Virus record (IMG/VR): IMGVR_UViG_3300044974_001280
Location: 1 to 64,000 of that record
DNA length: 64,000 bases
Direction: 5' to 3' (one strand)
In this document: piece after piece, positions 4,879-53,519 of the stretch
Numbering within the stretch: position 1 is the stretch's first letter
Layout of the letters: every line of letters starts with the position of its first letter
Position numbers and translations under genes: made by a program
Notes under the pieces: generated by a model
Seen by the model: only the letters and a program-made list of their open reading frames with translations
What the model was told of the DNA's origin: nothing
Database searches by the model: none

Positions 4879-4909
4879 AAATTAACTTAACAAAATACTT
4901 GAAGTTGAA

Positions 4910-4937
4910 GGAACACTCTTGATTAATTGAGATAAAA
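4910..4937 (+). promoter_or_regulatory. Putative ECF-sigma (middle) promoter for the glycosylation cluster
   Basis: GGAAC-N17-ATAAAA, the same layout as 7 other intergenic sites. Confidence 0.55.
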
Positions 4938-4942
4938 AAAAG

Positions 4943-5599
4943 GTGAAAAAAGTACTCATCGGAACCCCATCCTACGACGGTCGAATTGACACCTGGTTTG
5001 CAGATTCTCTAGTAAGAACTATTAAACAGGCAGACCCCAAACTGATAAACATTCACGCCATTTATCCTTCATATGATTCTCTGGTCCAAAGGGCTAGAAA
5101 CGATCTGGTCAGAATGGCAATGGATGGTGGCTATGACACCCTCTTTTTTATTGATTCCGATGTGGAGTGGGAACCCGAATGGTTTTTTAGATTTTTGGCC
5201 AGACCTGAACCGATCGTGGGAGCAGCCTTGATCAAAAAATCTGATCAAGAGTCCTATACGGTCAAGATCATAAAAAAGAATCTGACCAAATCCGAGGATG
5301 ATGTATTAGTTCAGGTAGATGGTTTAGGAACAGGTTTTCTAAAGGTGGACCGATTTGCCTTGGAAAAACTCTGGTTGATGAGTGAACCTTACGTCCACGA
5401 CGGAGTTCCCAATCGGATGGTTTTTGATTTGAAGATTGTGGATGGTGATTTGATCTCCGAGGATTACGTCATGTGCCACAAATGGCAAAGTTTAGGCTAC
5501 AAAGTGTGGCTGGATCCTAGCATCACCATCAATCACAACGGGGTGAAAAAATATCAAGGCAACTTGTCCTCCTTCCTTCAAAGAAATGGCTATGTTTGA
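4943..5599 (+). CDS. GT-A fold glycosyltransferase (GT2-like)
   Basis: IGTPSY start, RARN, FFIDSD (DxD), GTGF and SEDY motifs. Confidence 0.8.
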   Translation: MKKVLIGTPSYDGRIDTWFADSLVRTIKQADPKLINIHAIYPSYDSLVQRARNDLVRMAMDGGYDTLFFIDSDVEWEPEWFFRFLARPEPIVGAALIKKSDQESYTVKIIKKNLTKSEDDVLVQVDGLGTGFLKVDRFALEKLWLMSEPYVHDGVPNRMVFDLKIVDGDLISEDYVMCHKWQSLGYKVWLDPSITINHNGVKKYQGNLSSFLQRNGYV

Positions 5600-6512
5600 A
5601 AAACCTATGGGTGGCACCGAACTGATGTTCGAAGAATTGAAAAGAAGATTACCTGATTCTGTTTGGGGTAATTACTCCATTTTTAATTATCTTCCCCAAG
5701 CTGATTTTACCAAAAAGACTATTTACTGGAATCAGCTTTCCTGGGATCAACAGGCGGTTCAATTTCTAAAGGATCGGGATCTGGTGGAAAAAATAGATCA
5801 TTTCGTCTTCGTCAGCCACTGGCAGGCGGAGCAATTCAGACAGAGGTACAATATTCCTGGTTATAAGACCCATGTCCTAAAGAATGCCTCTCTCGGAGTG
5901 GAAACCAGACCTGTAGGTCCCCGATCTATCGTCAAATTGTGTTACACTTCCACCCCTTGGAGAGGACTAAATGTTCTTCTGCGAGCCTGGGAAATACTTC
6001 AGCCCCAGAATTGTGAACTCCACGTCTTTTCTTCCTGCCACATTTACGGTCCAGAATTCGGTAAATCTGATGCCCAATACGCAACCTTATACGAAAAGTG
6101 CCGAACCACTCCTGGTATAGTTTATAGGGGCTCTATTCCCAATCCACAGCTAAGAGGGGAGTTACCGAATTTCGATCTGTTGGCCTACCCCTGTACCTTC
6201 GAGGAAACCTCCTGTATCGCCGTCATTGAATCTCTATCCGCCGGTTTAAGGGTTGTTTGTTCCAACCTGGGTGCCCTGCCTGAAACAACAGAGGGCTGGG
6301 CTCGGCTGTACCCTTATCTCATGGATCCCGAAACCCACGCCCGCAGATTTTCAAAAATTCTGAGTTCAGAAATAGAAAAGGTCAGAGACGGCGGTTGGGA
6401 TTCTTCTTTACAAGCTGTCCATTATTCTCGGGGTTGGAGTTGGGACGAGAGAATAAAAGAATGGGTCGATTTTTTTCATCAATTGGCGAATGAACTGGAC
6501 GAAAATTTTTGA
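5586..6512 (+). CDS. GT-B glycosyltransferase (GT4-like); may start at 5592
   Basis: GGTE, FVSHWQ, YTSTPWRGL and YPCTFEETSCIAVIES (EX7E) motifs. Confidence 0.85.
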   Translation: MAMFEKPMGGTELMFEELKRRLPDSVWGNYSIFNYLPQADFTKKTIYWNQLSWDQQAVQFLKDRDLVEKIDHFVFVSHWQAEQFRQRYNIPGYKTHVLKNASLGVETRPVGPRSIVKLCYTSTPWRGLNVLLRAWEILQPQNCELHVFSSCHIYGPEFGKSDAQYATLYEKCRTTPGIVYRGSIPNPQLRGELPNFDLLAYPCTFEETSCIAVIESLSAGLRVVCSNLGALPETTEGWARLYPYLMDPETHARRFSKILSSEIEKVRDGGWDSSLQAVHYSRGWSWDERIKEWVDFFHQLANELDENF

Positions 6513-7104
6513 AAAAATTCAACCTCAGACCTTTTTGGACATTGGAGCCAACGAAGGTAATTTTACCTCTACCCTTTTAAAATTTTATCCTGACTGCAAG
6601 TGTCTGATGGTAGAGCCCAACCCAGCTTGCCGTCCCTTCTTAGTTTCGATCGGTCACCCTTTTGAGATCGTTGCTGTTTCTGGCTCTAACGGTAAGGGTC
6701 TTCTTCATGTTGAAAACTCTAACTCTTTGGCAACAGGTGCTTCTTTGTACAAAGAAAACACTCAATTTTATGCCCCAGGAAAATCACACCAGACAGAAGT
6801 TCAATTGATTACCTTGGATTCTTTGAACCCTTTTCCTAACACCGAGATAGATCTCATTAAGATTGACACACAAGGGTCTGAATTGGACATTTTAAAGGGC
6901 GGGAAACTAACGATTCAACGCACAAAATTTCTCTTGCTGGAAGTATCTCTCTTAGAATATAATTTAAATGCTCCTTTGATAGATGAAGTTCTTGATTGGA
7001 CTTCTGCACACAATTTTAACTTATGTGAGATTGTAAATTATCACCGGCTAGCTAATAATCAAATATTTCAGCTAGATGTTTTATTGATGAGATCTAGCAT
7101 CTGA
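6490..7104 (+). CDS. FkbM-family SAM methyltransferase
   Basis: LDIGANEG, VEPNP and IKIDTQGSELDIL motifs. Confidence 0.9.
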   Translation: MNWTKIFEKIQPQTFLDIGANEGNFTSTLLKFYPDCKCLMVEPNPACRPFLVSIGHPFEIVAVSGSNGKGLLHVENSNSLATGASLYKENTQFYAPGKSHQTEVQLITLDSLNPFPNTEIDLIKIDTQGSELDILKGGKLTIQRTKFLLLEVSLLEYNLNAPLIDEVLDWTSAHNFNLCEIVNYHRLANNQIFQLDVLLMRSSI

Positions 7105-7115
7105 CCTGATATCTT

Positions 7116-7268
7116 GTGATTTACAATTTTAAATATTCCAACTACAATTCAAGGGGAGCAGTAATTGACTATCTAAAAGAAAACAATTTCGGCCGATCTA
7201 TAGACGTTGGAGCTTCCATGAATGGCTGGTCAAAAGATTTCACGACTCATTATGATGTATCCTGGTAA
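7116..7268 (+). pseudogene. 50 aa ORF, probable truncated class I methyltransferase fragment
   Basis: GTG..TAA encodes MIYNFKYSNYNSRGAVIDYLKENNFGRSIDVGASMNGWSKDFTTHYDVSW; IDVGAS resembles SAM motif I. Confidence 0.45.
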
Positions 7269-7303
7269 ATGATGATTTAGATTAAGAAACAATTCTAATT
7301 TTT

Positions 7304-7311
7304 GATATATA
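7304..7311 (+). promoter_or_regulatory. Putative late promoter GATATATA
   Basis: Recurrent motif, 16 nt upstream of the ATG. Confidence 0.7.
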
Positions 7312-7327
7312 GTAACAAAATAATCTT

Positions 7328-7684
7328 ATGGCAAATACACTTTTGTTTGGAAAAATAAGTCCTGTTTTGAGTGTACCACAACAAGCAAATCAATTCAGTC
7401 AAAATATCACTTTTTTAACGGCCGATTATATGGCCGCTATCGCTGATCCATATCCTCTCGGAGCGACACAAGTCAACTTTTCTGTCCTATACGGTAACTG
7501 TCAGTTCAATGAATCTAACGAAATTATAGGATTTACGACCCTCTCTAGATCTGGGATCAATCTATCAGGTTCAGTGATCCAAAGCTGGGGTGTTGATGAC
7601 AAGGTTGTTCTAAATGCTATTGCATCTGCTCAAGGAACATCTATAGTTTCGACCCAAATTGGAACAGTGGATTCTTTTTTCTAG
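7328..7684 (+). CDS. Hypothetical protein, possibly fibre-associated or virion
   Basis: Clean ORF behind a late motif; no family recognised. Confidence 0.6.
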   Translation: MANTLLFGKISPVLSVPQQANQFSQNITFLTADYMAAIADPYPLGATQVNFSVLYGNCQFNESNEIIGFTTLSRSGINLSGSVIQSWGVDDKVVLNAIASAQGTSIVSTQIGTVDSFF

Positions 7685-7704
7685 TTTTTTTAAATTTCTG
7701 ACCT

Positions 7705-8526
7705 TTGGTTCAAAAAATCTTTTACAACAGTTCAATGCCCAGAGCAGGGTCTACTCTGATCCAAAATATACTGGGTCAGAATCCTCTTATTTACCCAACT
7801 CCAACCTCTGGTGTTTTCGAGATGCTCGCCGGGGCTAGAACAATTTTCACAGATGGTATAGAATTTAAAGCTCAATCGGAACAGGAAATGCTGGAGGGGT
7901 TTAAAGGATTCTTGAAAGGGGGACTTTATGGATTCTATAACAATATTACAGATAAACCTTACGTGATGGAAAAGTGTCGGGGCTGGAATTCGGAATGGGA
8001 GTTTGTGAATGCCTTCGATCCCAATCCAAAGATGATCTGTATGATTAGGGATATTAGGGCGGTCTATGCTTCTTTAGAAAAGAAATTCAGACAACATCCC
8101 CTTTTGGATCATCATCTAGCCAACTGGGGTAATTTGTCTGGAACTACCACCGATAAAAGGATCCAGGTTTGGTCGACTTCTCCGCCTATTGGTCCTTCCA
8201 TGGATAGAATCTACCAAGTTTTGGTCCAAGGGTTGCACGAAAAAATTCTGTTTGTTAAATTTGAAGATCTCTGTCGGGATCCAGAGTTTCAGATGAAAAG
8301 AATTTATGAATATCTCGATCTTGAATTTTTTCATCATGATTTTTACAACATTCCACAAATAACCAAAGAAGACGACCGGTGGTACGGTATTTTTGGAGAT
8401 CACGTCATTAGAAAGGAATTAAAGCCAGTGAGGGATGATTTCAGAGAAGTTTTAGGAACTAATGCCTGTAAATTAATTGAGGACAGCTATGCCTGGTTTT
8501 TTAACGATTTCGAATATCAAAGATGA
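7705..8526 (+). CDS. PAPS-dependent sulfotransferase
   Basis: 5'-PSB loop SMPRAGSTL, 3'-PB motif IRDIRAVYAS, and KFEDLCRDP. Confidence 0.9.
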   Translation: MVQKIFYNSSMPRAGSTLIQNILGQNPLIYPTPTSGVFEMLAGARTIFTDGIEFKAQSEQEMLEGFKGFLKGGLYGFYNNITDKPYVMEKCRGWNSEWEFVNAFDPNPKMICMIRDIRAVYASLEKKFRQHPLLDHHLANWGNLSGTTTDKRIQVWSTSPPIGPSMDRIYQVLVQGLHEKILFVKFEDLCRDPEFQMKRIYEYLDLEFFHHDFYNIPQITKEDDRWYGIFGDHVIRKELKPVRDDFREVLGTNACKLIEDSYAWFFNDFEYQR

Positions 8527-21835: not shown

Positions 21836-22390
21836 ATGGCAGGTTTACCTCATTTTCAGAATTCTCTGTACTCTATTAACAAATACGAGCCAGTTTATCT
21901 CAACCAATTCGAAGTGGTTGTAATTCCTCCAGCAGCTGTGGCAGGGGGTCAGCTTCTTCTTGAACAAGTTATGAGCGTAACCGGAATGGACGTGGATAAA
22001 AACCCGTCCTTTGTTTTCCAGAAGTACAAGTTTGCCAAAAGAAACTATGCCGGTGGTAAGCCAGATAGTACCGTCTTCGATTTAGGCTTAAGATTCAATG
22101 TCAATTTGAACGATGACAATTCAATGTACACTTTCAAGACTTTAAGACAGTGGACCGATTTGATCTATAATCCTTTGACGGGAGCCATGGGCATTAAATT
22201 AGATTACACAGGCACTATCATCATTTCGATTTTTAATAAAAATGGTGATGTTTTCAGAAGGATTACCTGCCGAGATTGTTTTCCGCTCAAGGCAATCGAC
22301 CCCATGGAACTTGATTACACTAATGGCACAACCTTGTATGAAATCAACATGAATTGGGCAGTTGATTATTGGGAAGATCTTTTCCTCTAA
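21836..22390 (+). CDS. Tail tube protein (gp19-like), paralog 1
   Basis: Follows the sheath; EPVYLNQFEV, LRQW.DLIYNP.TG and DYW motifs. Confidence 0.8.
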   Translation: MAGLPHFQNSLYSINKYEPVYLNQFEVVVIPPAAVAGGQLLLEQVMSVTGMDVDKNPSFVFQKYKFAKRNYAGGKPDSTVFDLGLRFNVNLNDDNSMYTFKTLRQWTDLIYNPLTGAMGIKLDYTGTIIISIFNKNGDVFRRITCRDCFPLKAIDPMELDYTNGTTLYEINMNWAVDYWEDLFL

Positions 22391-22405: not shown

Positions 22406-22987
22406 ATGTCCGGTTTACCACATTTCAATAATTCACTAGCAGCCAGGAACAATTTCGAGCCAGTTTTCTTAAACCAGTTCGAAGTTATCATTACCCCACC
22501 TGCTGCCGTGACTTTAGCAAATGTCAGATTTAACGGGGAGTCTATCATGACACAGCAGGTAAAAAGTATTGGTGGGAGTTTAGCAGTAGACATCCAGCCA
22601 GCCGCGCCGGTGACTCAATACTACAAATTCGCCGAAAGAAGATATGCCGGCGGTGAACCGTCAACTTCGGACGTAGAGTTTACCGTTAATTTCGAGGTGA
22701 ATTTAGATGAGAACAACTCGATGACTATTTACAAAATCCTGCGCCAATGGTCCGATTTGATCTACAATCCTTTGACAGGTGCGATGGGCCTAAAAAGAGA
22801 TTACGTTGGTCAAATGATTGTTTCTATTTTTAACAAACAAGGGGATGTATTCCGACGTCTAACTTTTAATAACTGTTTTTTGGTCAATCCTCTAACTACT
22901 ATGGCCCTTAGCTACGAGACTGGTGACGGCCTTTACGAGCTTGAAACAACCTGGAAGTCTGACTATTGGCAAGATCAGTTTTTATAA
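22406..22987 (+). CDS. Tail tube protein (gp19-like), paralog 2
   Basis: Clearly paralogous to the preceding gene. Confidence 0.8.
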   Translation: MSGLPHFNNSLAARNNFEPVFLNQFEVIITPPAAVTLANVRFNGESIMTQQVKSIGGSLAVDIQPAAPVTQYYKFAERRYAGGEPSTSDVEFTVNFEVNLDENNSMTIYKILRQWSDLIYNPLTGAMGLKRDYVGQMIVSIFNKQGDVFRRLTFNNCFLVNPLTTMALSYETGDGLYELETTWKSDYWQDQFL

Positions 22988-31591: not shown

Positions 31592-31599
31592 GATATATA
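31592..31599 (+). promoter_or_regulatory. Putative late promoter GATATATA
   Basis: Recurrent motif. Confidence 0.7.
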
Positions 31600-31626
31600 A
31601 AATGTAAAAAAACAAAATAAATCAAA

Positions 31627-34335
31627 ATGGATTTACTCACACAACTCAAAACCCTCAAAGAAAATTCTCAGAATCCTGAGGTTGTTCTTTTTTGCGAAAA
31701 TAGCATCAGGGAGATACAGCAAGGTAACAGCAACCTAAATGAAACAATGCTGTTTGATCAGGTTCAATCTTTGCAAAACACACAGCAGTCAACGGAGAAA
31801 AATCCTTTGGAAATCATTAGAGAGCAAGAAATGTCAACCTCTAAGAATGCTGCCACTAGAATTCTTGAATCATGGGGTGGTATAGGTTCTAAAACTTTCA
31901 AAAGTGCTGGTAGCTATGTCGATGGTGTTGAGGAGAAAAAACAGGTCTCACATCAGAACATCAATGAGGGCATTTCTTCTTTTGCATCTCAAGACGCAGG
32001 AGTAGCTTCTCTGATGAAATCTCAAGAAGTTCACAATCTTGGAATTTTAGAATCCATTTTGAGCCTTAAGGATGCAGGAATCTTCGAGCATCCTTCTGTT
32101 AAGATCCTGGCAGAAAGATACTATCATTTGTTGAAAGGGAAAAATCTGCCTGAATTTATTATAGCAGAATCTTTTCTTGGAGAACTAGGTAACTTCAACT
32201 GGGATCAGGACGTTAAACGGATGTACGAAGGTATTTCGAATAAAATTTCTAATTTGAGACCTGAAATCGAAGTGGCCAAAGCTTTGTACGCAATCAGTCA
32301 AAATGGAACACCTGATTTTTACTCTCCAGTAACAGAATCTCTGAACAAATGGCTGGTGTCTGAAAACAAATCGATTTCTCTACTTTCTCAAGAGATTTCT
32401 AGATGGCAGTTCAATCCTATTGTTAAAAATCTCCTAAACAATCTTTCTCTGATGGAAAGTACAAGCCGTCAGCTTCATGTTCCTGTTAGTTCTGGTAACA
32501 GTGAAGTGAGTAAAGTTTATTCTCCTGTTTTTGTAGAAGGTGGAAAAACCCTATTTGTTCTGGGCAAAAATGTTTTCGAAGCAACTTCAAATGGAATTTC
32601 AAAGCTCAGACACGGTCAAATAGCTTCTCTGCCAAACCGGTATCTGTCCTTGTTAGAGTCCTATGCTAATTTGAACACCAAGGCTGATGAAAAAGGTCTT
32701 TCGATTTACTTAGGCAAAACCAGAATTCTTTTGGTGGAAGAGAGCGAAAAAACTTCGGTTTACTTCGGTGGTAAGAAATTGAACTTCTCTGACTATAATC
32801 AATTTGCTCGAATTCTGTCGATTGAGATGAGCAAAACTTTGGGTCTCAACGAGAACAAGATCATCAGAGACGTTATCAATATCTATGAGAATTTCAGTAG
32901 CATCGTGGAATTGGATTTCGCCAAAACTATTTCTTCTAAATTGTATGAAGGTGCCGCAGTACATTTGATGAAATGGGACGGTAAGATCTATTTGAACAAG
33001 ATCAACGAGTCAATGAGAGAAGATTCTTTCTATGTTGTGAATGGCAATCAGGCTACATCAATGGTGAAAGAATTCTTGAAATATGATATTTCTGAAGGTC
33101 TCACTCAATTTTTAGATGGTGAGAATAGAGTTAAATCTGTTATGATGAACGATAGAAAAGTTCTGATGGAGAATATAGCTCTAGTTGAAACTCAGATCCA
33201 GAAGATTGAGAACCAGATGTCAAAAAGTCCTTTGTTTGCAAATTCTCAAGAAATGCAAAATGCCAAATACCTCTTAGAAAGAGAGCTTGGAATTCTGAGA
33301 CAGAAATGGTCGGTTGTGAATGAAGAAATTAAGAAAATTGAATCTGCTCCAGATCCAATTCATAACATGAACGAGGACGATGATTTCAATGTGGGGGAAT
33401 ACGTAAAGGTGAAAGAATCAGGCAACACGGGTAAAATCATTTCTATCAACGGTTCATCTGGTTCCTATACTGTCTTAATGGACAACGGCAGAACTGGAGA
33501 ATTTAGATTGGATGAAATCATCAATCTAGACGATGCGCTGGCTGCCGCTGGTGACGAGAACGAAGCCGAAGCAGAAACCCAAGAAGAATTGAAAGAAGGA
33601 ACTCAGCCTTTAGCATCGGCTCCAGGTTCGTCAAAAACGGGTAAATTAGACAAATCTGTTGCTGCCACTATGAGAAAAAGTACCACAAAAGCTCCTGCAG
33701 GTTCTCATCAAAACGAAGCTGGAAAAAAGGACATTGAAGATCTGGATGACGCCAATCTAGAAGAAGCACCAGCAGGTCAAAAACTAACAAAATATAAGGC
33801 TTACAAAAAAGCTGGATATAACCTGGCTGAATCTAAAGGCACAGGTAAATCCACTTCAGCCCCAGAAACCAGTTGGGAATCAGCAAAGGCAAAGGAAATG
33901 AATCTGGCAGTTGCCCCAGGTAAAACAAACTATGACTCCAGTTATTTCTACAAGACAAAAGTCACTCAAGGGGAATCTAAGAATCCCGAAGTGATGAAAA
34001 CGGACCCCAATTTTGCTGCTGCTCCAGGTACTCAAGGAGCTGGTAAAGATCTGAAGTACAGAGTCAGCTCGGAGATGGGTTACAACGTAGATGAAATGGC
34101 GGAGATCGAAAAGACCAATCAAGAGTTGGCAAAAGCCCCTGGTCCTATTGGAACATACGGCAAAAAATTCGGCGCCAGAACCATCCACGGAAAACCAGGT
34201 AAACCCGAGGTCATGAACATCGATCCTAATTTTGCTAATGCCCCAGGAATGAACTCAAAAGGTGAAGTTGATTACGATCTAAATGACGAAATGGGTTACA
34301 ATCTGGACGAAAGCCAGGAGTCAAAAAAAAACTGA
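31627..34335 (+). CDS. Large probable prohead core/internal protein with a KOW/SH3-like domain and C-terminal APG...GYN repeats
   Basis: Many (L/I)NE-type protease sites; FNVGEYVKV...GKII; repeated APG and GYN(L/V) motifs. Confidence 0.6.
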   Translation: MDLLTQLKTLKENSQNPEVVLFCENSIREIQQGNSNLNETMLFDQVQSLQNTQQSTEKNPLEIIREQEMSTSKNAATRILESWGGIGSKTFKSAGSYVDGVEEKKQVSHQNINEGISSFASQDAGVASLMKSQEVHNLGILESILSLKDAGIFEHPSVKILAERYYHLLKGKNLPEFIIAESFLGELGNFNWDQDVKRMYEGISNKISNLRPEIEVAKALYAISQNGTPDFYSPVTESLNKWLVSENKSISLLSQEISRWQFNPIVKNLLNNLSLMESTSRQLHVPVSSGNSEVSKVYSPVFVEGGKTLFVLGKNVFEATSNGISKLRHGQIASLPNRYLSLLESYANLNTKADEKGLSIYLGKTRILLVEESEKTSVYFGGKKLNFSDYNQFARILSIEMSKTLGLNENKIIRDVINIYENFSSIVELDFAKTISSKLYEGAAVHLMKWDGKIYLNKINESMREDSFYVVNGNQATSMVKEFLKYDISEGLTQFLDGENRVKSVMMNDRKVLMENIALVETQIQKIENQMSKSPLFANSQEMQNAKYLLERELGILRQKWSVVNEEIKKIESAPDPIHNMNEDDDFNVGEYVKVKESGNTGKIISINGSSGSYTVLMDNGRTGEFRLDEIINLDDALAAAGDENEAEAETQEELKEGTQPLASAPGSSKTGKLDKSVAATMRKSTTKAPAGSHQNEAGKKDIEDLDDANLEEAPAGQKLTKYKAYKKAGYNLAESKGTGKSTSAPETSWESAKAKEMNLAVAPGKTNYDSSYFYKTKVTQGESKNPEVMKTDPNFAAAPGTQGAGKDLKYRVSSEMGYNVDEMAEIEKTNQELAKAPGPIGTYGKKFGARTIHGKPGKPEVMNIDPNFANAPGMNSKGEVDYDLNDEMGYNLDESQESKKN

Positions 34336-34508
34336 AAAAAATCCTGAGCCGAGTTTGGTCTTTCGCTCCTTCCAGCCCGGATCAAAACGACAAGCCTAAG
34401 CCTTTTGTGGTAGACTACAAAAAAGGCATGAGCTTTGCCCCCACCGGCAAGAATGAGGGTGAAAACCTCATCTCTGATGAGGATGGTGATTTTTCAGAAA
34501 AAGAATAA
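34329..34508 (+). CDS. Putative -1 frameshift extension (59 codons) of the 902 aa protein
   Basis: Slippery A_AAA_AAC precedes the TGA; the -1 frame is open with SFAP motifs and ends at TAA 34506-34508. Confidence 0.55.
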   Translation, partial: KLKKILSRVWSFAPSSPDQNDKPKPFVVDYKKGMSFAPTGKNEGENLISDEDGDFSEKE

Positions 34509-34511
34509 ATG

Positions 34512-34539
34512 GGAACTTTTCTAATTTTAGTTGATATAA
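34512..34539 (+). promoter_or_regulatory. Putative ECF-type promoter for the late sigma gene
   Basis: GGAAC-N17-ATATAA, overlapping a GATATAAA late-like site. Confidence 0.5.
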
Positions 34540-34563
34540 AAAAAACAAGATATGTTTTTTTAA

Positions 34564-34923
34564 ATGTCGAAGATCTATGTAACTAATCAAAATCTGATGG
34601 AGGCAATTCTTGAATCTAAAGAGAAGGGAGAATTAACACCAGCAGCCATAGAAATGTTCACTCTGATGATCTCGGGCATTTCTAAAAAAATGTCTTATAA
34701 GGATCCTGATGATAAAGATGATTGTATGGCTTTTGCCATGGAGGATCTTTGCAAATATTGGAATAGATTCGACCCAGAAAAATCCAACAATCCTTTTTCC
34801 TATTACACCCAAATAGCCAAAAATGGGTTTGCAAAAGGCTGGAAAAAAATACATCCCCCCAAATCACCTAAGACTATTCCTTTTTCTCACATCACGGGAG
34901 AAGATAATTCTTATAATGTGTAA
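34564..34923 (+). CDS. gp55: Late-transcription sigma factor (T4 gp55-like), minimal
   Basis: YVTN...FDPEKSNNPFSYYTQIA motif. Confidence 0.85.
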   Translation: MSKIYVTNQNLMEAILESKEKGELTPAAIEMFTLMISGISKKMSYKDPDDKDDCMAFAMEDLCKYWNRFDPEKSNNPFSYYTQIAKNGFAKGWKKIHPPKSPKTIPFSHITGEDNSYNV

Positions 34924-35405
34924 TGACTGATATCAAAAAAATCAAGCCAAATGGCAATTTTAAATCTGGCGTATTTGCCCCTTTAAATCCAGAAAAATAC
35001 ATCGGAGATATCAATAACATCATTTGCAGATCAAGCTGGGAATACAGGTTCTGTAAATACTGTGATTCGAATCCACTGATTTTAAAATGGTCTTCTGAGC
35101 CCCTGCCAATTCCTTACTACAACCCTTTAGATCAGAAAGATCATAAATATCATGTTGACTTTTACATGAGGGTCCAGCAGGAAAACGGGGAACAGCAGGA
35201 ATGGCTTATCGAGGTAAAGCCCCAGAGACAGCACGAAAAACCAGTTTTCGAAGGAAGCAAAACCAACGAAAAATTGAAATCCTACAACGATAAGATGAAA
35301 GTCTGGATCACCAATCAGGCTAAATTTAAAGCGGCAAAAATCTGGGCAGAAGCGAGAGGAATGAAATTTGGAGTAGTAAACGAGAATTTCCTATTTAACA
35401 AGTAA
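34923..35405 (+). CDS. gp4: Head completion nuclease (T4 gp4-like)
   Basis: NPEKYIGD, RSSWE, WSSE..IPY, Y.VDF, IEVKP and NQAK motifs. Confidence 0.9.
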   Translation: MTDIKKIKPNGNFKSGVFAPLNPEKYIGDINNIICRSSWEYRFCKYCDSNPLILKWSSEPLPIPYYNPLDQKDHKYHVDFYMRVQQENGEQQEWLIEVKPQRQHEKPVFEGSKTNEKLKSYNDKMKVWITNQAKFKAAKIWAEARGMKFGVVNENFLFNK

Positions 35406-35506: not shown

Positions 35507-37111
35507 ATGGCAGGTTTTAGCGAGAATCCAAACACCAATCCAATCTTTCAGAAGATTAGGGATTCGGTTAAAAATCTGAGTAATTTCGGGATCCGATATG
35601 GTGACATGGTTGTCAAAAATTCTCAGGCTATTGGGGCCACTGAAGCTGAATTTTTGAAAAAAGGACCTATTGAGGATGAAACCACCTTCTTTTCTTTAGG
35701 TCGCCAAGACACAACCACCAGGCAGTATATTTCTTATTTTGATAAAGACTATGCGGGAAAAAGAGATTATCTGAGAAAATTCTCTTTGAACCCTGAGATA
35801 GAATACATTTTAGACACTGTCTGTGATGAATCTATTACTTACGATTCTTATAATTTCTTTGCCTATCCAGCTTTTCTGAACCTATCTAATCTTAAAAAGT
35901 CCGTTATCGATCGCATCGATTCGACTTATAAGAAACTGTATGACATGTTCGGTTTCAACGATGACATTTCGGCCTGGCAGTATTTCAGGCAAATGCTGGT
36001 GGATGGATTTATTGCCTTTGAGATTGTCTTTGATGATAGCGGCAGAAACATCATCGGATTTAAAGAGCTAGATGCCACGACCCTCATGCCTTCTGTGGAA
36101 AAACAGAAAGACGGAACTTTTTTGAATGTTTGGTATCAATACCCTAAAGATGAAAGAAAAAGAAGAATGTTGTACGACTCTCAGGTCATCTACATTTCTT
36201 ACGCCAAAGGCAATTCTATTTCTAGAGTTAGCTACACAGAAAGACTGATTAGACCTTACAATGTCTTGAGAATTATCGAATACACCAGAGTTATTTGGTC
36301 GGTCATGAATGCTTCTTTTAGGATGAAGATGACCATTCCGGTGGGATCTAGATCCCAACAGAAAGCAATGCAAACTCTGGGAGAATTGATGTCTATCTAC
36401 AAAGAGGACATCCAGTTTAACGACGAGAGTGGAGAACTTTCTGTTAACGGCCAACCCAAGATTCAGTTCTATAAGAACTATCTAATGCCCAAAGGAGCAG
36501 GAGGCACCCCTTCTATTGAGCCTCTAAACACGGCAGGCCCCAATCTGAATGATCCTGCCCCATTAGCCTATTTTTTCGATAAATTAGTGCAGGAATCAAA
36601 AATTCCTTTTTCCCGGTTTCAGGGGCCTGATGGCGGATCTATTGGAAAATACGCTAATGCTGCCGAAGGTTTAGATAAAGAAGAAATCAGATTCTCTAAA
36701 TTTATTATGAGGCTTAGATCTGTATTTCAGGATATCCTGGTTAAGCCTCTATGGATTCAAATCTGTAAAGATTTTCCCCAACTAGAAAAGGATTACACTT
36801 TTAAATCCCAATTAGGTCTAAGCTATGTTTCAGATAACCCCTTCCGGGTTAACCAGGAGATTGAAACCATTACGAAGAGAAAAGAATTTATAGATTCTCT
36901 TTATACCCTCACCGACGAGGAAGGAAATCCTTTCTTTTCTATCTCATATCTAGTGGAAAACTACATGGGTCTTACTGAGGATGATATAGCTTCTAATAAA
37001 AAAGCCAGAAGTGATAACAAATTAAAATCTGCTGAAGAAGCTGCGGCTGCCAGCGCATCTCCGCCAGCGGGCGAGTCCGAGCCAGAAGTAGCACCAGAAA
37101 CCCCAGTATAA
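35507..37111 (+). CDS. Portal protein (gp20-like), paralog 1
   Basis: EIEYILDTVCDE, WQYFRQMLVDG, SY.ERLIRPYN.LR, KIPFSRF and EEIRF.KFI.RLR motifs. Confidence 0.85.
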   Translation: MAGFSENPNTNPIFQKIRDSVKNLSNFGIRYGDMVVKNSQAIGATEAEFLKKGPIEDETTFFSLGRQDTTTRQYISYFDKDYAGKRDYLRKFSLNPEIEYILDTVCDESITYDSYNFFAYPAFLNLSNLKKSVIDRIDSTYKKLYDMFGFNDDISAWQYFRQMLVDGFIAFEIVFDDSGRNIIGFKELDATTLMPSVEKQKDGTFLNVWYQYPKDERKRRMLYDSQVIYISYAKGNSISRVSYTERLIRPYNVLRIIEYTRVIWSVMNASFRMKMTIPVGSRSQQKAMQTLGELMSIYKEDIQFNDESGELSVNGQPKIQFYKNYLMPKGAGGTPSIEPLNTAGPNLNDPAPLAYFFDKLVQESKIPFSRFQGPDGGSIGKYANAAEGLDKEEIRFSKFIMRLRSVFQDILVKPLWIQICKDFPQLEKDYTFKSQLGLSYVSDNPFRVNQEIETITKRKEFIDSLYTLTDEEGNPFFSISYLVENYMGLTEDDIASNKKARSDNKLKSAEEAAAASASPPAGESEPEVAPETPV

Positions 37112-37116
37112 TAGAC

Positions 37117-38742
37117 ATGGCAGGATTTTTAGATAATGCTCAGGAAAAATCTTTTTTGGGGGTTCTGTACAGAAACCTCGGAAAGATTAGTAAATTCGGG
37201 ATGCAATATGAAGATATGGTTATCCGTAATTCTCAGGCCATTGGTGCTACCGAATCGACCTTTTTTAACAATCAAGGCACTGGTTTTACCGAAAATGATG
37301 CCTTTTTCTGGACTTTAGGTTACCAGGATACCAGAATCAGAAAATACATCGCCTATTTTGATAAGGATTATCTTGGTAAAAGAGAATTCCTTCGCAAATT
37401 TGCTCTCAACGGAGAAATAGATTTCATTCTAGACACCGTTACTGATGATGCGATAAACTACGATGACAAGAATTTTTTCTGCTACCCCAGTTTGGTGAAT
37501 ATTGAGCTGAAAGACAACGTCAGGGAGAGAGTGGAAGAAAATTTTAGAACCTTATATAATCTTTTTGGCTTTCAACAAAGCATTCTGGCTTGGCAGTACT
37601 TCAAGCAGTTTTTGGTTGATGGTTTTTTGGCTTTTGAGATTGTTTATTCTACAGATGGCAAGAAAATAGTTGGATTCAAAGAACTAGACGCCACCTCACT
37701 TCAGCCGGCCACTGAAAAACAGCCCAACGGGGAATTCCAACAAATTTGGATCCAATATCCTCAGGACAACCGAATGACCAGAAAGCTGAAATCGGAACAG
37801 GTTATTTACTTGTCTTACGCCAAGGGCAATGCTGTCTCCAGAGTTAGCTACACAGAAAGGCTCATTCGTTCCTATAACATTTTAAGGGTGATGGAAAATA
37901 CGAGAGTTATTTGGAATGTCATGAATGCATCCTATCGACTGAAGTTCATTATCCCTGTTGGTACTCAATCCATGCAAAAAGGCATGCAGACTCTTGGTCA
38001 ATTGATGTCCCAGTACAAGGAGGAGATCCAGATCAACGACACTTCGGGGGAACTAACGGTCAATGGTGCACCCAGAGTCCAGTTTTATAAAAACTATCTG
38101 TTCCCTGAGAAGGACGGCGAATCTCCTGATATTAGCACACTCAACCCCAGCGGACCGGATTTTAACGTGATGGAAAATGTTGTTTATTTTTACAACAAAT
38201 TGAAGTTGGATTCTAAAATCCCTTACGCCAGGTTTTCAGCCAGATCCGGAACCCCTGCTAATTATCAGATTAGCATAGATCAGTTGGAGAGGGACGAAAT
38301 TCGATATGAAAAATTTGTAACTCGTCTGAGATCTGTTTTCCAGGAGATCCTAGTTAAACCTCTTTATATCCAAATGTGTCTAGATTTTCCTGTTTTGTCA
38401 AAGGATCGTACTTTTAAGGTAAATTTGGGTTTAGATTATGTGAAGGAAAATGTCTTCGAACAAATGATTCAGTTGTCCAACTATTCCAAGAGAGCATCTT
38501 TTATTTCCAGCATGGGTGAGATAAAAATGAAAGTGGGGGAAGAGGAATTACCCTATTTTGACAAAGAATGGCTTATCAAAAGATGGCTGGGTCTTAGTAT
38601 GGATGAATACAGGATGAACGAAAAGTACAAGAAGGAAGAGAAGGAAGAAGCAGATAAATTAAAGAAAGATCAAGAGAAAGAAGGAGAGAAGAAAGGAGAA
38701 GGGGGAGAGGGACAAGCAGAAACACCTAGTTTTACCCTATAA
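37117..38742 (+). CDS. Portal protein (gp20-like), paralog 2
   Basis: Same motif set, collinear with paralog 1. Confidence 0.85.
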   Translation: MAGFLDNAQEKSFLGVLYRNLGKISKFGMQYEDMVIRNSQAIGATESTFFNNQGTGFTENDAFFWTLGYQDTRIRKYIAYFDKDYLGKREFLRKFALNGEIDFILDTVTDDAINYDDKNFFCYPSLVNIELKDNVRERVEENFRTLYNLFGFQQSILAWQYFKQFLVDGFLAFEIVYSTDGKKIVGFKELDATSLQPATEKQPNGEFQQIWIQYPQDNRMTRKLKSEQVIYLSYAKGNAVSRVSYTERLIRSYNILRVMENTRVIWNVMNASYRLKFIIPVGTQSMQKGMQTLGQLMSQYKEEIQINDTSGELTVNGAPRVQFYKNYLFPEKDGESPDISTLNPSGPDFNVMENVVYFYNKLKLDSKIPYARFSARSGTPANYQISIDQLERDEIRYEKFVTRLRSVFQEILVKPLYIQMCLDFPVLSKDRTFKVNLGLDYVKENVFEQMIQLSNYSKRASFISSMGEIKMKVGEEELPYFDKEWLIKRWLGLSMDEYRMNEKYKKEEKEEADKLKKDQEKEGEKKGEGGEGQAETPSFTL

Positions 38743-51462: not shown

Positions 51463-53493
51463 ATGAGTCTAGGTCCTTTTGGAGAAGATATGGTTTTCAT
51501 TCTGGAAAAACAGAATCACCATGTTAATGTTTCGAAACAGAAAGTAGATGGGGACAATGTTTACACATTGAAAGGAATTGCTGCTCAATTTGGTAAAGAA
51601 AACAACAACAATAGAATCTACGAAGAAGCAGAATATCTACCCCATCTTGACTACTTGAACGAGAAAATCAAACAAAAAAGATTGGTTGGTGAACTAGATC
51701 ACCCCGAGAAATTTGATGTCTCTCTCAGAAACATTTCACACATCATCGAAAATCTCGAGTATGATAAAAACGGTCGGGTACTGAACATTAAAGTCAAGTT
51801 GCTTGATACTCCCGCAGGTCAGATTGCCAAGAAGCTGGTTGATGCCGGTGTTCCTCTTTCTATTTCTTCAAGAGCTGCTGGTAATGTGGGTCCGGATAAA
51901 AAGGTTCAGATCAAAAAGATCTTCACTTACGACCTAGTCGCAGATCCTGGTTTTCAAGACGCCCAATTAGAAAGAGTCTATGAAAGCGCGGGCTTTTCTT
52001 TTTCGGAATTCGCCGACAAGACTAAAAATTCCATTGTGAGCCATTTAGAGTGTATCAATGAATCTTTGGGTCTAAAAAATAACGATTCAGTAAAGATATA
52101 TAGAGTCGAAAATAACGAAGAATTCGAAAAAATATTCACAACAGAAAAAAATAACATCGATATTATGGAGTCACAAAAAAGAGAATTCGTTACGGCCGAA
52201 GAGCTCAACAAATATTCTATTTTTCTGAAAAAGAAAATGGAGGAAATGGAAATGCAAATTCAGGAGATGAAGAGCAGTTCACCACAGTCAAGCAATGCAT
52301 CTGAAAATGCTCAGCTGTTGGAGAGAATTGACCGTCTAGAAGAATATTCCGAATATCTAGCCGAAAATTTAGAGGATGCTATCAAATACGGCGAATATTT
52401 GGCTGAAAATTTGGACGACTCCATCAATTACAGCAAGTATCTGGCCGAGAGCCTGGATAAATCGATCTCTTACTCGAAGTATTTGGCCGAGAATGTAGAC
52501 AACTCTATTTCTTATTCAGAATACGTAGCAGAGAATGTGGATAGAACCATCAACTACTCGAAATATTTGGCAGAAAAGATCGACGATGGTATTCAGTACA
52601 GCGAGTATGTGGCTGAAAACCTAGGTAACAGTATTGCCTACTCTGAATATCTGGCCGAAAACGTCGACAGAGGAATTGCCTACTCTGAATATCTGGCCGA
52701 GAAGGTTGATAGGAACATTTCGTACTCTGAATATCTGGCCGAGTATATCGATAAAGACATCGCCTACTCTGAATATCTAGGAGAAAAAATAGATCAAGGT
52801 ATTTCTTACTCTGAATATCTGGCTGAAAAACTAGATCAGGGTATCTCTTATTCGGAATATCTGGCTGAAAATGTGAACAGGACTATCTCTTACTCTGAAT
52901 ACATTGCAGAAAAATTAAACGGCACAATTGAATTTGGTGAGGCACTATCAGAAAAAGTTGGTTATCCAACCCATCTGAATTCCAGAGCCAGATCAGAAGC
53001 AAATCTTGCCGCTAAAACTGAATTATTTGAATCAGGATTTGCCGGGGATTATAATAACCTCGGAAGTCAAATCGATTCATTAATCGAATCGGTCCAAACC
53101 CAAAAGACCGAATTAACCCGGGCCCAACTGGTTGGAAGGCCCTCTGCCCACACTCCAAAGGCAGAAGAGATGCTCAACGAGAATCAATCAGCCACCATTT
53201 CCTCCTCAGGTCATAAATTTATCGACGAAATGCCGGAAAATTATGCTCCAATTTGGGAATCTCTCAACGAAGGACAGAAGCAATCTATTATTGCTCAGTC
53301 CGCTTTCTATCGATTGGAGACACCTTATCAGATCAACAATTTCTGGTCTACTCGTAACTTGAGGAAAGAAACGGTGACTATGCAGAGACTCGATGAGAAT
53401 CAACAAACCCATGCTCTTCCCCAGTCGACGACTCGTGCTTATGGAAGTGATTACCTAAACTGGGTAGCTCAATCACTGGAGAAAAGATTCTAA
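51463..53493 (+). CDS. gp21: Prohead protease (gp21-like) fused to a scaffold-like region
   Basis: N.N.RIY, GELDHP, LLDTPAG, ISSR and TYDLVADPGF, followed by coiled-coil repeats; upstream of the capsid gene. Confidence 0.9.
   Translation: MSLGPFGEDMVFILEKQNHHVNVSKQKVDGDNVYTLKGIAAQFGKENNNNRIYEEAEYLPHLDYLNEKIKQKRLVGELDHPEKFDVSLRNISHIIENLEYDKNGRVLNIKVKLLDTPAGQIAKKLVDAGVPLSISSRAAGNVGPDKKVQIKKIFTYDLVADPGFQDAQLERVYESAGFSFSEFADKTKNSIVSHLECINESLGLKNNDSVKIYRVENNEEFEKIFTTEKNNIDIMESQKREFVTAEELNKYSIFLKKKMEEMEMQIQEMKSSSPQSSNASENAQLLERIDRLEEYSEYLAENLEDAIKYGEYLAENLDDSINYSKYLAESLDKSISYSKYLAENVDNSISYSEYVAENVDRTINYSKYLAEKIDDGIQYSEYVAENLGNSIAYSEYLAENVDRGIAYSEYLAEKVDRNISYSEYLAEYIDKDIAYSEYLGEKIDQGISYSEYLAEKLDQGISYSEYLAENVNRTISYSEYIAEKLNGTIEFGEALSEKVGYPTHLNSRARSEANLAAKTELFESGFAGDYNNLGSQIDSLIESVQTQKTELTRAQLVGRPSAHTPKAEEMLNENQSATISSSGHKFIDEMPENYAPIWESLNEGQKQSIIAQSAFYRLETPYQINNFWSTRNLRKETVTMQRLDENQQTHALPQSTTRAYGSDYLNWVAQSLEKRF
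52345..52932 (+). repeat. 14 tandem 42-bp (14 aa) repeats YSEYLAE(N/K)xDxxIx
   Basis: Direct translation; tactctgaatatctggccga recurs. Confidence 0.92.
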
Positions 53494-53519
53494 AAAAAAA
53501 CAAAAAAAACAATAAAAAA

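What the first reader, a model, noticed from the sequence alone, without database searches (positions are those of the whole stretch)
34321..34508. Probable -1 ribosomal frameshift extending the 902 aa head protein
Seen: the CDS ends TCA AAA AAA AAC TGA, an X_XXY_YYZ slippery heptamer (A_AAA_AAC) right before the stop. The -1 frame reads KLKKILSRVWSFAPSSPDQNDKPKPFVVDYKKGMSFAPTGKNEGENLISDEDGDFSEKE*. It fills the gap up to the next promoter and echoes the upstream AP repeats. Inference: two isoforms arise by frameshifting or by transcriptional slippage on the A9 run.
Basis: partly seen in the sequence, partly recalled or inferred. Interest (0 to 1): 0.6.

Follow-up and report, generated by a model that had tools for sequence, protein, structure and literature searches.

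The report
Conserved A9 recoding site, jumbo phage
A run of nine A's at the end of a 902-residue late gene of a 230-kb T4-like lake phage is an evolutionarily conserved slip site that lets part of the product continue for 58 more residues in the -1 frame, so one gene makes a short and a long protein: a well-supported new example of a known trick.

Summary
ORF 31627-34335 ends TCA AAA AAA AAC TGA, with an A9 run at 34323-34331. The -1 frame stays open for 58 codons, to the TAA at 34506-34508.

Comparative data show a conserved recoding site, not an error or a chance ORF.
- Among 81 distinct relatives (38-100% protein identity) the run is never shorter than nine A's: 76 have A9 with the stop directly after it, two have A10, and three are in-frame fusions.
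- The codon before Lys-Lys varies (Ser, Leu, Val, Gly, Glu), but its third base is always A.
- The -1 ORF is always open for 50-63 codons, apart from one 77-codon outlier. It has no usable start codon and shows a coding-type substitution pattern only in that frame.
- One nested clade has fused the two frames but kept A9. There the -1 frame stops after 1-3 codons. This inverted layout argues that both isoforms are needed.

No conserved RNA structure flanks the site, and the genome is poor in SD motifs. I therefore favour transcriptional slippage by the host RNA polymerase (A9 to A10 in the mRNA). Unstimulated -1 ribosomal frameshifting at A_AAA_AAC remains possible, and no RNA reads cross the site.

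The protein is not demonstrably a head protein. It has a folded core, an SH3-like domain and a disordered tail of AP motifs; its function is unknown.

The parts
31592..31601 (+). Promoter-like motif GATATATAAA, 26 nt upstream of the gene start
   Evidence: the motif occurs 13 times on the + strand and once on the - strand of the 230-kb genome, almost always just upstream of ORF starts, including the tail-tube gene at 21836. It resembles a T4-type late promoter; that reading is an inference.
31627..34335 (+). Zero-frame ORF giving the short isoform (902 aa). It has a folded core of about residues 110-640, including a coiled coil and an SH3-like domain at about 590-633, followed by a disordered tail (645-902) with 8 AP motifs.
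   Evidence: weak MSSS SH3 match, below the curated cut-off; 231 homologues; AlphaFold model.
34323..34331 (+). A9 run, the slip site
   Evidence: A9 or A10 is present in 81/81 distinct relatives that carry the tail. The third base of the preceding codon is always A across six codon types.
34326..34332 (+). Heptamer A_AAA_AAC in X_XXY_YYZ phase, a possible ribosomal -1 slip site
   Evidence: Relatives carry A_AAA_AAC, A_AAA_AAT, A_AAA_AAG or A_AAA_AAA in the same phase.
34333..34335 (+). Zero-frame stop TGA, directly after the slip site
   Evidence: In 76 of 81 relatives a stop (TAA, TGA or TAG) directly follows the run.
34332..34508 (+). -1 frame extension: 58 codons plus TAA. It holds two more AP motifs and an acidic C-terminal end. 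The long isoform is 960 aa.
   Evidence: The frame is open for 50-63 codons in relatives, apart from one 77-codon outlier (L088), and its motifs are conserved. Synonymous/non-synonymous codon differences are 2392/2256 in this frame against 580/3701 and 292/4008 in the other two. There is no start codon upstream, and none within the first 24 codons. The same sequence is in frame with the main ORF in L090, L106 and L107.
34533..34542 (+). Promoter-like motif (variant GATATAAAAA) ahead of the next gene
34564..34923 (+). Next gene: T4 gp55-like late sigma factor, a conserved neighbour of this gene
   Evidence: The same order is seen in the distant huge phage LR756500.

Best explanation
The A9 run is a programmed recoding site that splits expression of one late gene into two C-terminal isoforms. 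Standard decoding stops at TGA 34333 and gives the 902-aa form. A fraction of products continues in the -1 frame for 58 codons and gives a 960-aa form. The long form carries two further AP motifs and an acidic C-terminal end.

The most likely route is transcriptional slippage. The host multisubunit RNA polymerase realigns the nascent A-run on the T9 template and adds one A. Ordinary translation of the resulting A10 mRNAs then reads ...S-K-K-K-L... into the extension. mRNAs with two extra A's, or one fewer, end within a few codons and give a near-short form. A small contribution from -1 tandem tRNA slippage at A_AAA_AAC (giving ...K-K-N-L...) may add to this.

Shown: the sequence layout, its conservation, and protein-level selection on the -1 frame. 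Inferred: that the shift happens at transcription, the isoform ratio, and the role of the two forms. The extra tail probably adds binding valency and an acidic end to a disordered, multivalent interaction region of a late-expressed protein of unknown function.
For: (1) Nearly all homologues end in KKN-stop, although the preceding tail is highly variable: 144 of 146 proteins longer than 600 aa.

(2) All 81 distinct loci have A9 (79) or A10 (2). The codon 5' of Lys-Lys is TCA, TTA, CTA, GTA, GGA or GAA, so its third base is always A. From this genome's codon usage, the product of the A-ending fractions is 0.0012. This constraint goes three bases beyond what the heptamer needs. It matches the 9-10 bp RNA:DNA hybrid and the run of 9 A/T at which bacterial RNA polymerase slips efficiently (PMC5009743; PMC3711429).

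(3) The -1 ORF is always open, and its motifs are conserved through many synonymous changes. The coding signature appears only in that frame.

(4) The extension cannot be initiated on its own.

(5) A nested clade (L107, L090, L106) has fused the frames but kept A9, and its -1 frame stops after 1-3 codons. Both isoforms are therefore still obtainable there, with the roles inverted.

(6) No conserved structure lies downstream or upstream of the run (0 pairs; z = +0.70; no Rfam frameshift element). SD-like motifs are rarer upstream of genes than in the genome background, at 7.6% against 13%. The AGGAG 5' of the run in the window is not conserved. In E. coli, A_AAA_AAC is much less shifty than A_AAA_AAG (PMC5009743).

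(7) The +1 frame closes after 2-6 codons in most loci, as expected if other slippage products should simply terminate.
Against: No RNA or protein data cross the site. The only RNA run (X20) has contigs at 31814-32042 and 34711-34874 and none over the run.

The heptamer is in the correct phase in every relative, and the direction is always -1, never +1. By the criterion of PMC3711429 that pattern points to ribosomal frameshifting.

A9 would also allow the E-site tRNA to re-pair after a -1 shift, so the extra A's are not unique evidence for slippage at transcription.

Two other A9 runs lie inside ordinary genes of the same genome with no alternative frame. Either slippage there is tolerated, or A9 alone is not very slippery in this host.

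One 6.2-kb contig (L140) lacks the site altogether, though it looks chimeric.
Confidence: 0.55

Rival explanations
1. The same two isoforms are made mainly by -1 programmed ribosomal frameshifting. tRNA-Lys in the P site and tRNA-Asn in the A site slip back on A_AAA_AAC, and the adjacent stop codon defines the short form.
For: The heptamer is in X_XXY_YYZ phase in all 81 relatives, with variants A_AAA_AAT, A_AAA_AAG and A_AAA_AAA. The direction is uniformly -1, which is the PRF criterion of PMC3711429. A_AAA_AAC is a recognised slippery heptamer (PMC5009743). From my own knowledge, IS1 uses A6C in E. coli without a strong stimulator.
Against: There is no conserved downstream stem-loop or pseudoknot, no conserved upstream SD, and the genome is SD-poor. 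Three A's beyond the heptamer are invariant at a synonymous site across six codon types. In E. coli, A_AAA_AAC is far less efficient than A_AAA_AAG, yet most lineages keep C or T at that position.
Confidence: 0.33
2. DNA-level heterogeneity (replication slippage, phase variation): sub-populations of phage genomes carry A10 and encode the fused protein directly.
For: Poly-A tracts are also slippery for DNA polymerases (PMC3711429). Contigs hide minor variants.
Against: None of 81 distinct assemblies, and none of 146 long homologous proteins, shows a simple A10 fusion. The two A10 loci keep the zero-frame stop and the -1 relation. The three fusions arose through a different change 3' of an intact A9.
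Confidence: 0.04
3. Artefact or no function: the A9 is a homopolymer sequencing error in a single continuous ORF, or the -1 ORF is a chance open frame or a separately initiated small gene.
For: A 58-codon open frame in 39% GC DNA is not extremely improbable on its own. Homopolymers are error-prone in some sequencing chemistries.
Against: Independent assemblies agree on A9. The zero-frame stop directly after the run is itself conserved, with Ser and Arg codons of the A-starting type following it. The -1 frame is under protein-level selection. No start codon is available. The zero-frame stop varies among TAA, TGA and TAG, so neither stop-codon reassignment nor readthrough explains the layout.
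Confidence: 0.02

Closest known systems
Thermus thermophilus dnaX: transcriptional slippage on a run of nine A's giving tau and gamma (as reviewed in PMC5009743)
   Same: A bare run of 9 A's in the mRNA sense. There are no obvious stimulators. Two products share an N-terminus and differ at the C-terminus. Stops lie nearby in the unused frames.
   Different: In Thermus the zero frame gives the long product and slippage gives the short one. Here that layout is seen only in the derived fused clade (L090, L106, L107), and the common layout is the reverse. The protein family is unrelated, and the site is in a phage gene. Slippage is not shown experimentally here.
E. coli dnaX -1 PRF at A_AAA_AAG, and IS1 / IS3-family -1 PRF
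   Same: An A-rich X_XXY_YYZ heptamer and a -1 direction. Orthologues alternate between fused and frameshift-requiring layouts.
   Different: dnaX has an upstream SD and a downstream stem-loop. No such elements are conserved here. The run here is constrained to 9 or more A's rather than 6.
Shigella spa13 / mxiE and Citrobacter rodentium tssM transcriptional frameshifting (PMC5009743; PMC4256274)
   Same: Homopolymer-run slippage by bacterial RNA polymerase gives a C-terminally extended variant, or two length variants, of a structural or assembly protein.
   Different: Those are bacterial secretion-system genes. In tssM the site rescues an interrupted gene. Here the site is conserved across a deep phage clade.
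Phage recoding that makes C-terminally extended structural proteins: T7 gene 10A/10B, and tail assembly chaperone G/GT (own knowledge; G/GT in PMC5009743)
   Same: A -1 shift near the 3' end of a late phage gene yields a minor longer isoform at a fixed ratio.
   Different: Those are ribosomal events at shorter heptamers, in known capsid and chaperone families. This protein belongs to neither family and its virion association is unknown.

Membership tests
-1 programmed ribosomal frameshift cassette | Slippery heptamer X_XXY_YYZ in the zero-frame phase at the point where the frames change | tested here: met
   A_AAA_AAC at 34326-34332. In-phase A_AAA_AAY, A_AAA_AAG or A_AAA_AAA in all 81 distinct relatives.
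-1 programmed ribosomal frameshift cassette | Stimulatory element: a stem-loop or pseudoknot a few nt downstream, or an SD-like sequence upstream | tested here: not met
   RNAalifold finds 0 conserved pairs downstream and upstream. The window's own fold gives z = +0.70. There is no Rfam frameshift element. The AGGAG in the window is not conserved, and the genome is SD-poor.
-1 programmed ribosomal frameshift cassette | Trans-frame protein with the zero-frame A-site residue (Asn) at the junction | not testable with these tools
   Needs mass spectrometry of infected cells or virions.
Programmed transcriptional realignment (slippage) site | Homopolymer of about 9 or more A/T, the RNA:DNA hybrid length, conserved at nucleotide level beyond coding needs | tested here: met
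   A9 or A10 in 81/81 relatives. The third base of the variable preceding codon is always A, with a chance product of 0.0012. Length criterion from PMC5009743 and PMC3711429.
Programmed transcriptional realignment (slippage) site | mRNA population heterogeneous in run length while the DNA is uniform | tested here: inconclusive
   DNA contigs are uniform at A9. The only RNA run has no contig across the run, and only contigs, not raw reads, were available.
Programmed transcriptional realignment (slippage) site | Orthologues that need shifts in different directions (criterion of PMC3711429) | tested here: not met
   All frameshift-requiring loci need -1 and none needs +1. Only the in-frame fusion clade differs.
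Functional overlapping or extension ORF | Purifying selection at protein level in the alternative frame, and no independent start | tested here: met
   Natural in-frame fusions contain the same sequence.
Phage head (virion) protein | Homology in sequence or fold to a known head protein family, or detection in virions | tested here: not met
   No PHROG family. The only Pfam match is a weak sub-threshold SH3 (MSSS) hit. Foldseek finds nothing convincing in the PDB, and in BFVD only uncharacterised myovirus proteins. The atlas search gave nothing. A late-promoter-like motif and the neighbourhood (gp55, gp4, portal) are only circumstantial.
T4-like (Straboviridae-type) large phage | T4-type portal gp20, head-completion gp4, late sigma gp55, large terminase, sheath and tube | tested here: met
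   The nearest public phages by portal are huge phages (LR7565xx), Lak phages and Sphingomonas phage PAU. The genome is 230,445 bp.

The most novel reading that the evidence does not exclude
A whole clade of freshwater and marine T4-like jumbo phages uses programmed transcriptional slippage by the host RNA polymerase, on transcripts probably driven by the gp55-type late sigma. The slippage sets a fixed ratio of two isoforms of a conserved, partly disordered late protein. Evolution has flipped the default isoform at least once while keeping the A9 run. To my knowledge this would be the first programmed transcriptional realignment described in a T4-like phage, and a phage parallel to the dnaX tau/gamma story.
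Probability: 0.5. Interest if true: 0.65.

Novelty: new member of a known kind. Interest (0 to 1): 0.6.

Why it matters
Gene callers annotate this gene as ending at KKN and leave the 50-63 conserved codons after it as 'intergenic' in hundreds of metagenomic phage contigs. The real product set therefore includes an unannotated long isoform.

The site is an unusually clean natural data set for separating transcriptional from ribosomal frame changes. The run length is invariant and there are no stimulators. Y, G and A variants of the last base all occur. One clade has the layout inverted.

The site also flags the gene as important, since both isoforms have been kept over deep divergence. That gives a handle on the function of a conserved but uncharacterised protein that sits beside the late sigma factor, head-completion and portal genes.

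Tried and rejected
- **Known recoding elements:** Rfam has no match.
- **RNA structure:** no conserved structure downstream or upstream of the run.
- **SD stimulator:** the AGGAG five bases before the run in the window is not conserved, and the genome avoids SD motifs.
- **Phage-encoded tRNA that might promote shifting:** the genome has no tRNA genes.
- **Stop-codon reassignment or readthrough:** rejected. The zero-frame stop varies among TAA, TGA and TAG, the zero frame after it shows no coding signature, and the window is densely coding under table 11. No other genetic code was used.
- **Independent initiation of the extension:** rejected.
- **+1 frame product:** that frame closes within 2-6 codons in most loci and is not conserved.
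- **Function of the protein:** PHROGs, Pfam, Foldseek PDB/BFVD and the ESM atlas gave no named family. The top PDB hit (RqcH-type chains, TM about 0.1) is a coiled-coil artefact.
- **AP motif elsewhere in the genome:** the only hits were structured LRR-like repeats, which are unrelated.
- **Near-identical DNA in the phage collection:** none.
- **Literature:** searches found no description of this family or site. This is absence in a limited library, not proof.
- **RNA evidence:** only assembled contigs were available, and the single RNA run does not cross the run.
- **Handling of the joined product:** the trans-frame protein was never typed or submitted. The natural in-frame fusions (L090, L106, L107) served in its place.
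Full report
**1. The observation**

The window is part of a single 230,445-bp contig of a T4-like large phage. Its genes include:
- a large terminase, a tail sheath and two tail-tube paralogues;
- a gp55-like late sigma factor at 34564-34923;
- a gp4-like head-completion protein at 34923-35405;
- two tandem gp20-like portal genes.

By portal similarity the nearest public phages are metagenomic huge phages, Lak phages and Sphingomonas phage PAU.

ORF 31627-34335 (902 aa) ends TCA AAA AAA AAC TGA. The A run is exactly nine bases, 34323-34331.

The AP echo is real. There are eight AP dipeptides in residues 645-902, against 1.7 expected from composition and one in residues 1-644, and two more in the 58-residue extension. 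In the window this is the only homopolymer of nine or more bases inside a coding region.

**2. It is not an error**

- An identical IMG/VR contig (L001) has A9.
- Nineteen lake-water metagenome runs hold the stretch.
- Contigs of runs not flagged as the possible source cover the run without difference or gap: X19 over 34241-34433, and X17 over 34294-35344, the latter with only 29 letters to its left.
- Only contigs were available, so minor variants cannot be excluded.

**3. Conservation**

A word-index protein search found 231 homologues. Of the best 120 (39-98% identity, 833-990 aa), every full-length one ends in KKN, although the sequence just before it is highly variable. Counting cluster members as well, 144 of 146 proteins longer than 600 aa end in KKN.

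I fetched 80 IMG/VR loci and 58 metagenome loci. Among 81 distinct 200-nt sequences around the site:
- 76 have A9 followed by C, T or G and then directly a stop (TAA, TGA or TAG);
- two have A10 (L121, L099), with the same frame relation;
- three (L090, L106, L107) are in-frame fusions that still carry A9.

The codon before Lys-Lys is TCA, TTA, CTA, GTA, GGA or GAA. That is five different amino acids, yet the third base is always A. With this genome's codon usage, the product of the A-ending fractions for these six families is 0.0012. The constraint is therefore on nine or more A's, three more than the X_XXY_YYZ heptamer requires.

**4. The -1 frame codes for protein**

- It is open for 50-63 codons in every locus, apart from one 77-codon outlier (L088), and carries conserved motifs. 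These are L-K/R-K-I-L-S-R/K-V-W-S/A-F-A-P or L-S-R-N-F-Y-F-A-P-K, then a second ...S/A-x-A-P-D/T-G-K motif, then an acidic end.
- In relatives with 58% identity, the first 18 residues are identical to the window's through many synonymous changes.
- Over the first 16 codons of 32 distinct sequences, codon differences are 2392 synonymous to 2256 non-synonymous in the -1 frame. In the other two frames the counts are 580/3701 and 292/4008.
- Upstream of the run the -1 frame is open for only 4-18 codons and has no ATG, GTG or TTG. Downstream, the first possible start lies at least 24 codons into the conserved region, or is absent. The extension can therefore be reached only from the main ORF.
- The +1 frame closes after 2-6 codons in most loci.

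**5. A natural experiment**

L107, L090 and L106 form one clade (support 97/92) nested deep in the family. It is sister to L099, an A10-G frameshift-requiring locus. In this clade the bases after A9-C changed from TA to CCC, so a single ORF reads ...K-K-N-P-S-R-N-F-Y-F-A-P-K... through to the acidic end.

The A9 is nevertheless kept in all three, which differ from one another at synonymous sites. Their -1 frame now stops after one to three codons. Standard decoding there gives the long form and a slip gives a short one. This is the same kind of inversion known among dnaX genes (PMC5009743; PMC3711429), and it argues that both isoforms are selected.

More distant relatives lack the AP-repeat tail and the A run:
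- L129 and L131 (39-41% identity) still end in a short acidic tail.
- The 617-aa homologue in huge phage LR756500 ends after the SH3-like domain, yet is still followed by a gp55-like gene.

**6. Mechanism**

No conserved RNA structure follows or precedes the run. RNAalifold found zero pairs on 26 and 25 diverse loci. The window's own fold is no better than shuffles. No Rfam element matches.

SD-like motifs precede only 11 of 145 long ORFs, which is below the genome background. The leaders are A-rich, and there are no tRNA genes. This suggests an SD-independent host, probably Bacteroidota. That inference fits the fold-level relatives found in Tenacibaculum phages.

Three facts come from the review PMC5009743:
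- In E. coli, A_AAA_AAC is much less shifty than A_AAA_AAG.
- Bacterial RNA polymerase slips efficiently on runs of nine A's or T's.
- The hybrid in Thermus RNA polymerase is 9-10 bp, and Thermus dnaX uses such a run productively.

Taken with the invariant run of nine or more A's, these facts lead me to favour transcriptional slippage as the main route (about 0.55). Unstimulated -1 ribosomal frameshifting is the main rival (about 0.33), and both could contribute.

Evidence on the other side:
- The direction is always -1 and the heptamer is always in phase. This is the PRF signature in the scheme of PMC3711429.
- A9 would also allow E-site re-pairing.
- Two other A9 runs sit inside ordinary genes of this genome.

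The two routes predict different junction residues, Lys or Asn at position 902, and a different RNA run-length distribution. Neither could be tested here, because the one RNA run has no contig over the site.

**7. What the protein is**

The AlphaFold model was built on 72 sequences (mean pLDDT 63.5). It gives a confident helical and beta core at about residues 110-640, with a long coiled coil and an SH3-like barrel at about 590-633. Residues 645-902 are fully disordered.

Pfam gives only a sub-threshold MSSS SH3 match and PHROGs gives nothing. Foldseek finds only uncharacterised myovirus proteins in BFVD and nothing convincing in the PDB.

The gene is preceded by the motif GATATATAAA. This motif occurs 13 times on the coding strand just upstream of ORFs, including the tail-tube gene, so late expression is likely. 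'Head protein' is not supported.

My working view is that this is a late protein whose disordered tail carries repeated short AP motifs for multivalent binding. The long isoform would add two motifs and an acidic end. This is inference only.

**8. Verdict**

The mechanism is open between the polymerase and the ribosome, with a lean to the polymerase. The finding is a new member of a known kind of system, in an uncharacterised and widespread phage gene family.

No alternative genetic code was invoked. The joined trans-frame sequence was not typed or submitted to any tool.

Noticed in passing
window 35507-37111 and 37117-38742: Two tandem T4 gp20-like portal genes, 52% identical over 503 residues. 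A duplicated portal is unusual, because a capsid has a single portal vertex.
   Followed up: partly
window 15460, 21820, 29227, 31592, 34533, 44580 and seven further sites in G000: The motif GATATATAAA occurs 13 times on the + strand and once on the - strand of the genome. Nearly all copies lie just upstream of ORF starts, including a tail-tube gene. It is probably the late promoter.
   Followed up: partly
window 21836-22390 and 22406-22987: Two adjacent tail-tube paralogues.
   Followed up: no
whole genome G000: SD-like motifs precede only 7.6% of long ORFs, below the genome background of 13%. Leaders are A-rich and there are no tRNA genes. This suggests an SD-independent host such as Bacteroidota.
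   Followed up: partly
G000:C1 170274-170282 (+) and 229648-229656 (- strand gene), outside the window: Two further A9 runs lie inside ordinary ORFs (EKKM and RKKN contexts). Both alternative frames close quickly, so no extension is possible there.
   Followed up: partly
window 53492-53509: An A9 run followed by C and an A8 run, directly overlapping the stop of ORF 51463-53493, in an intergenic position.
   Followed up: no
G000:C1 147039-149936 (- strand), outside the window: Three tandem paralogues with 21-residue leucine-rich-type repeats (...NQLTSLAGAPQTVGG...) and a shared C-terminal domain.
   Followed up: no
L140 4400-4613 (protein P0144): In one 6.2-kb metagenome contig the gene diverges just before the usual KKN end, and the A run and extension are replaced by unrelated sequence. 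It is either an assembly chimera or a recombinant.
   Followed up: partly
L081 (LR756500.1) 3575-8033: In a 462-kb huge phage the distant 617-aa homologue has no tail and no A run. It keeps the order homologue, gp55-like gene, gp4-like gene, with a 537-aa ORF inserted between the last two.
   Followed up: partly
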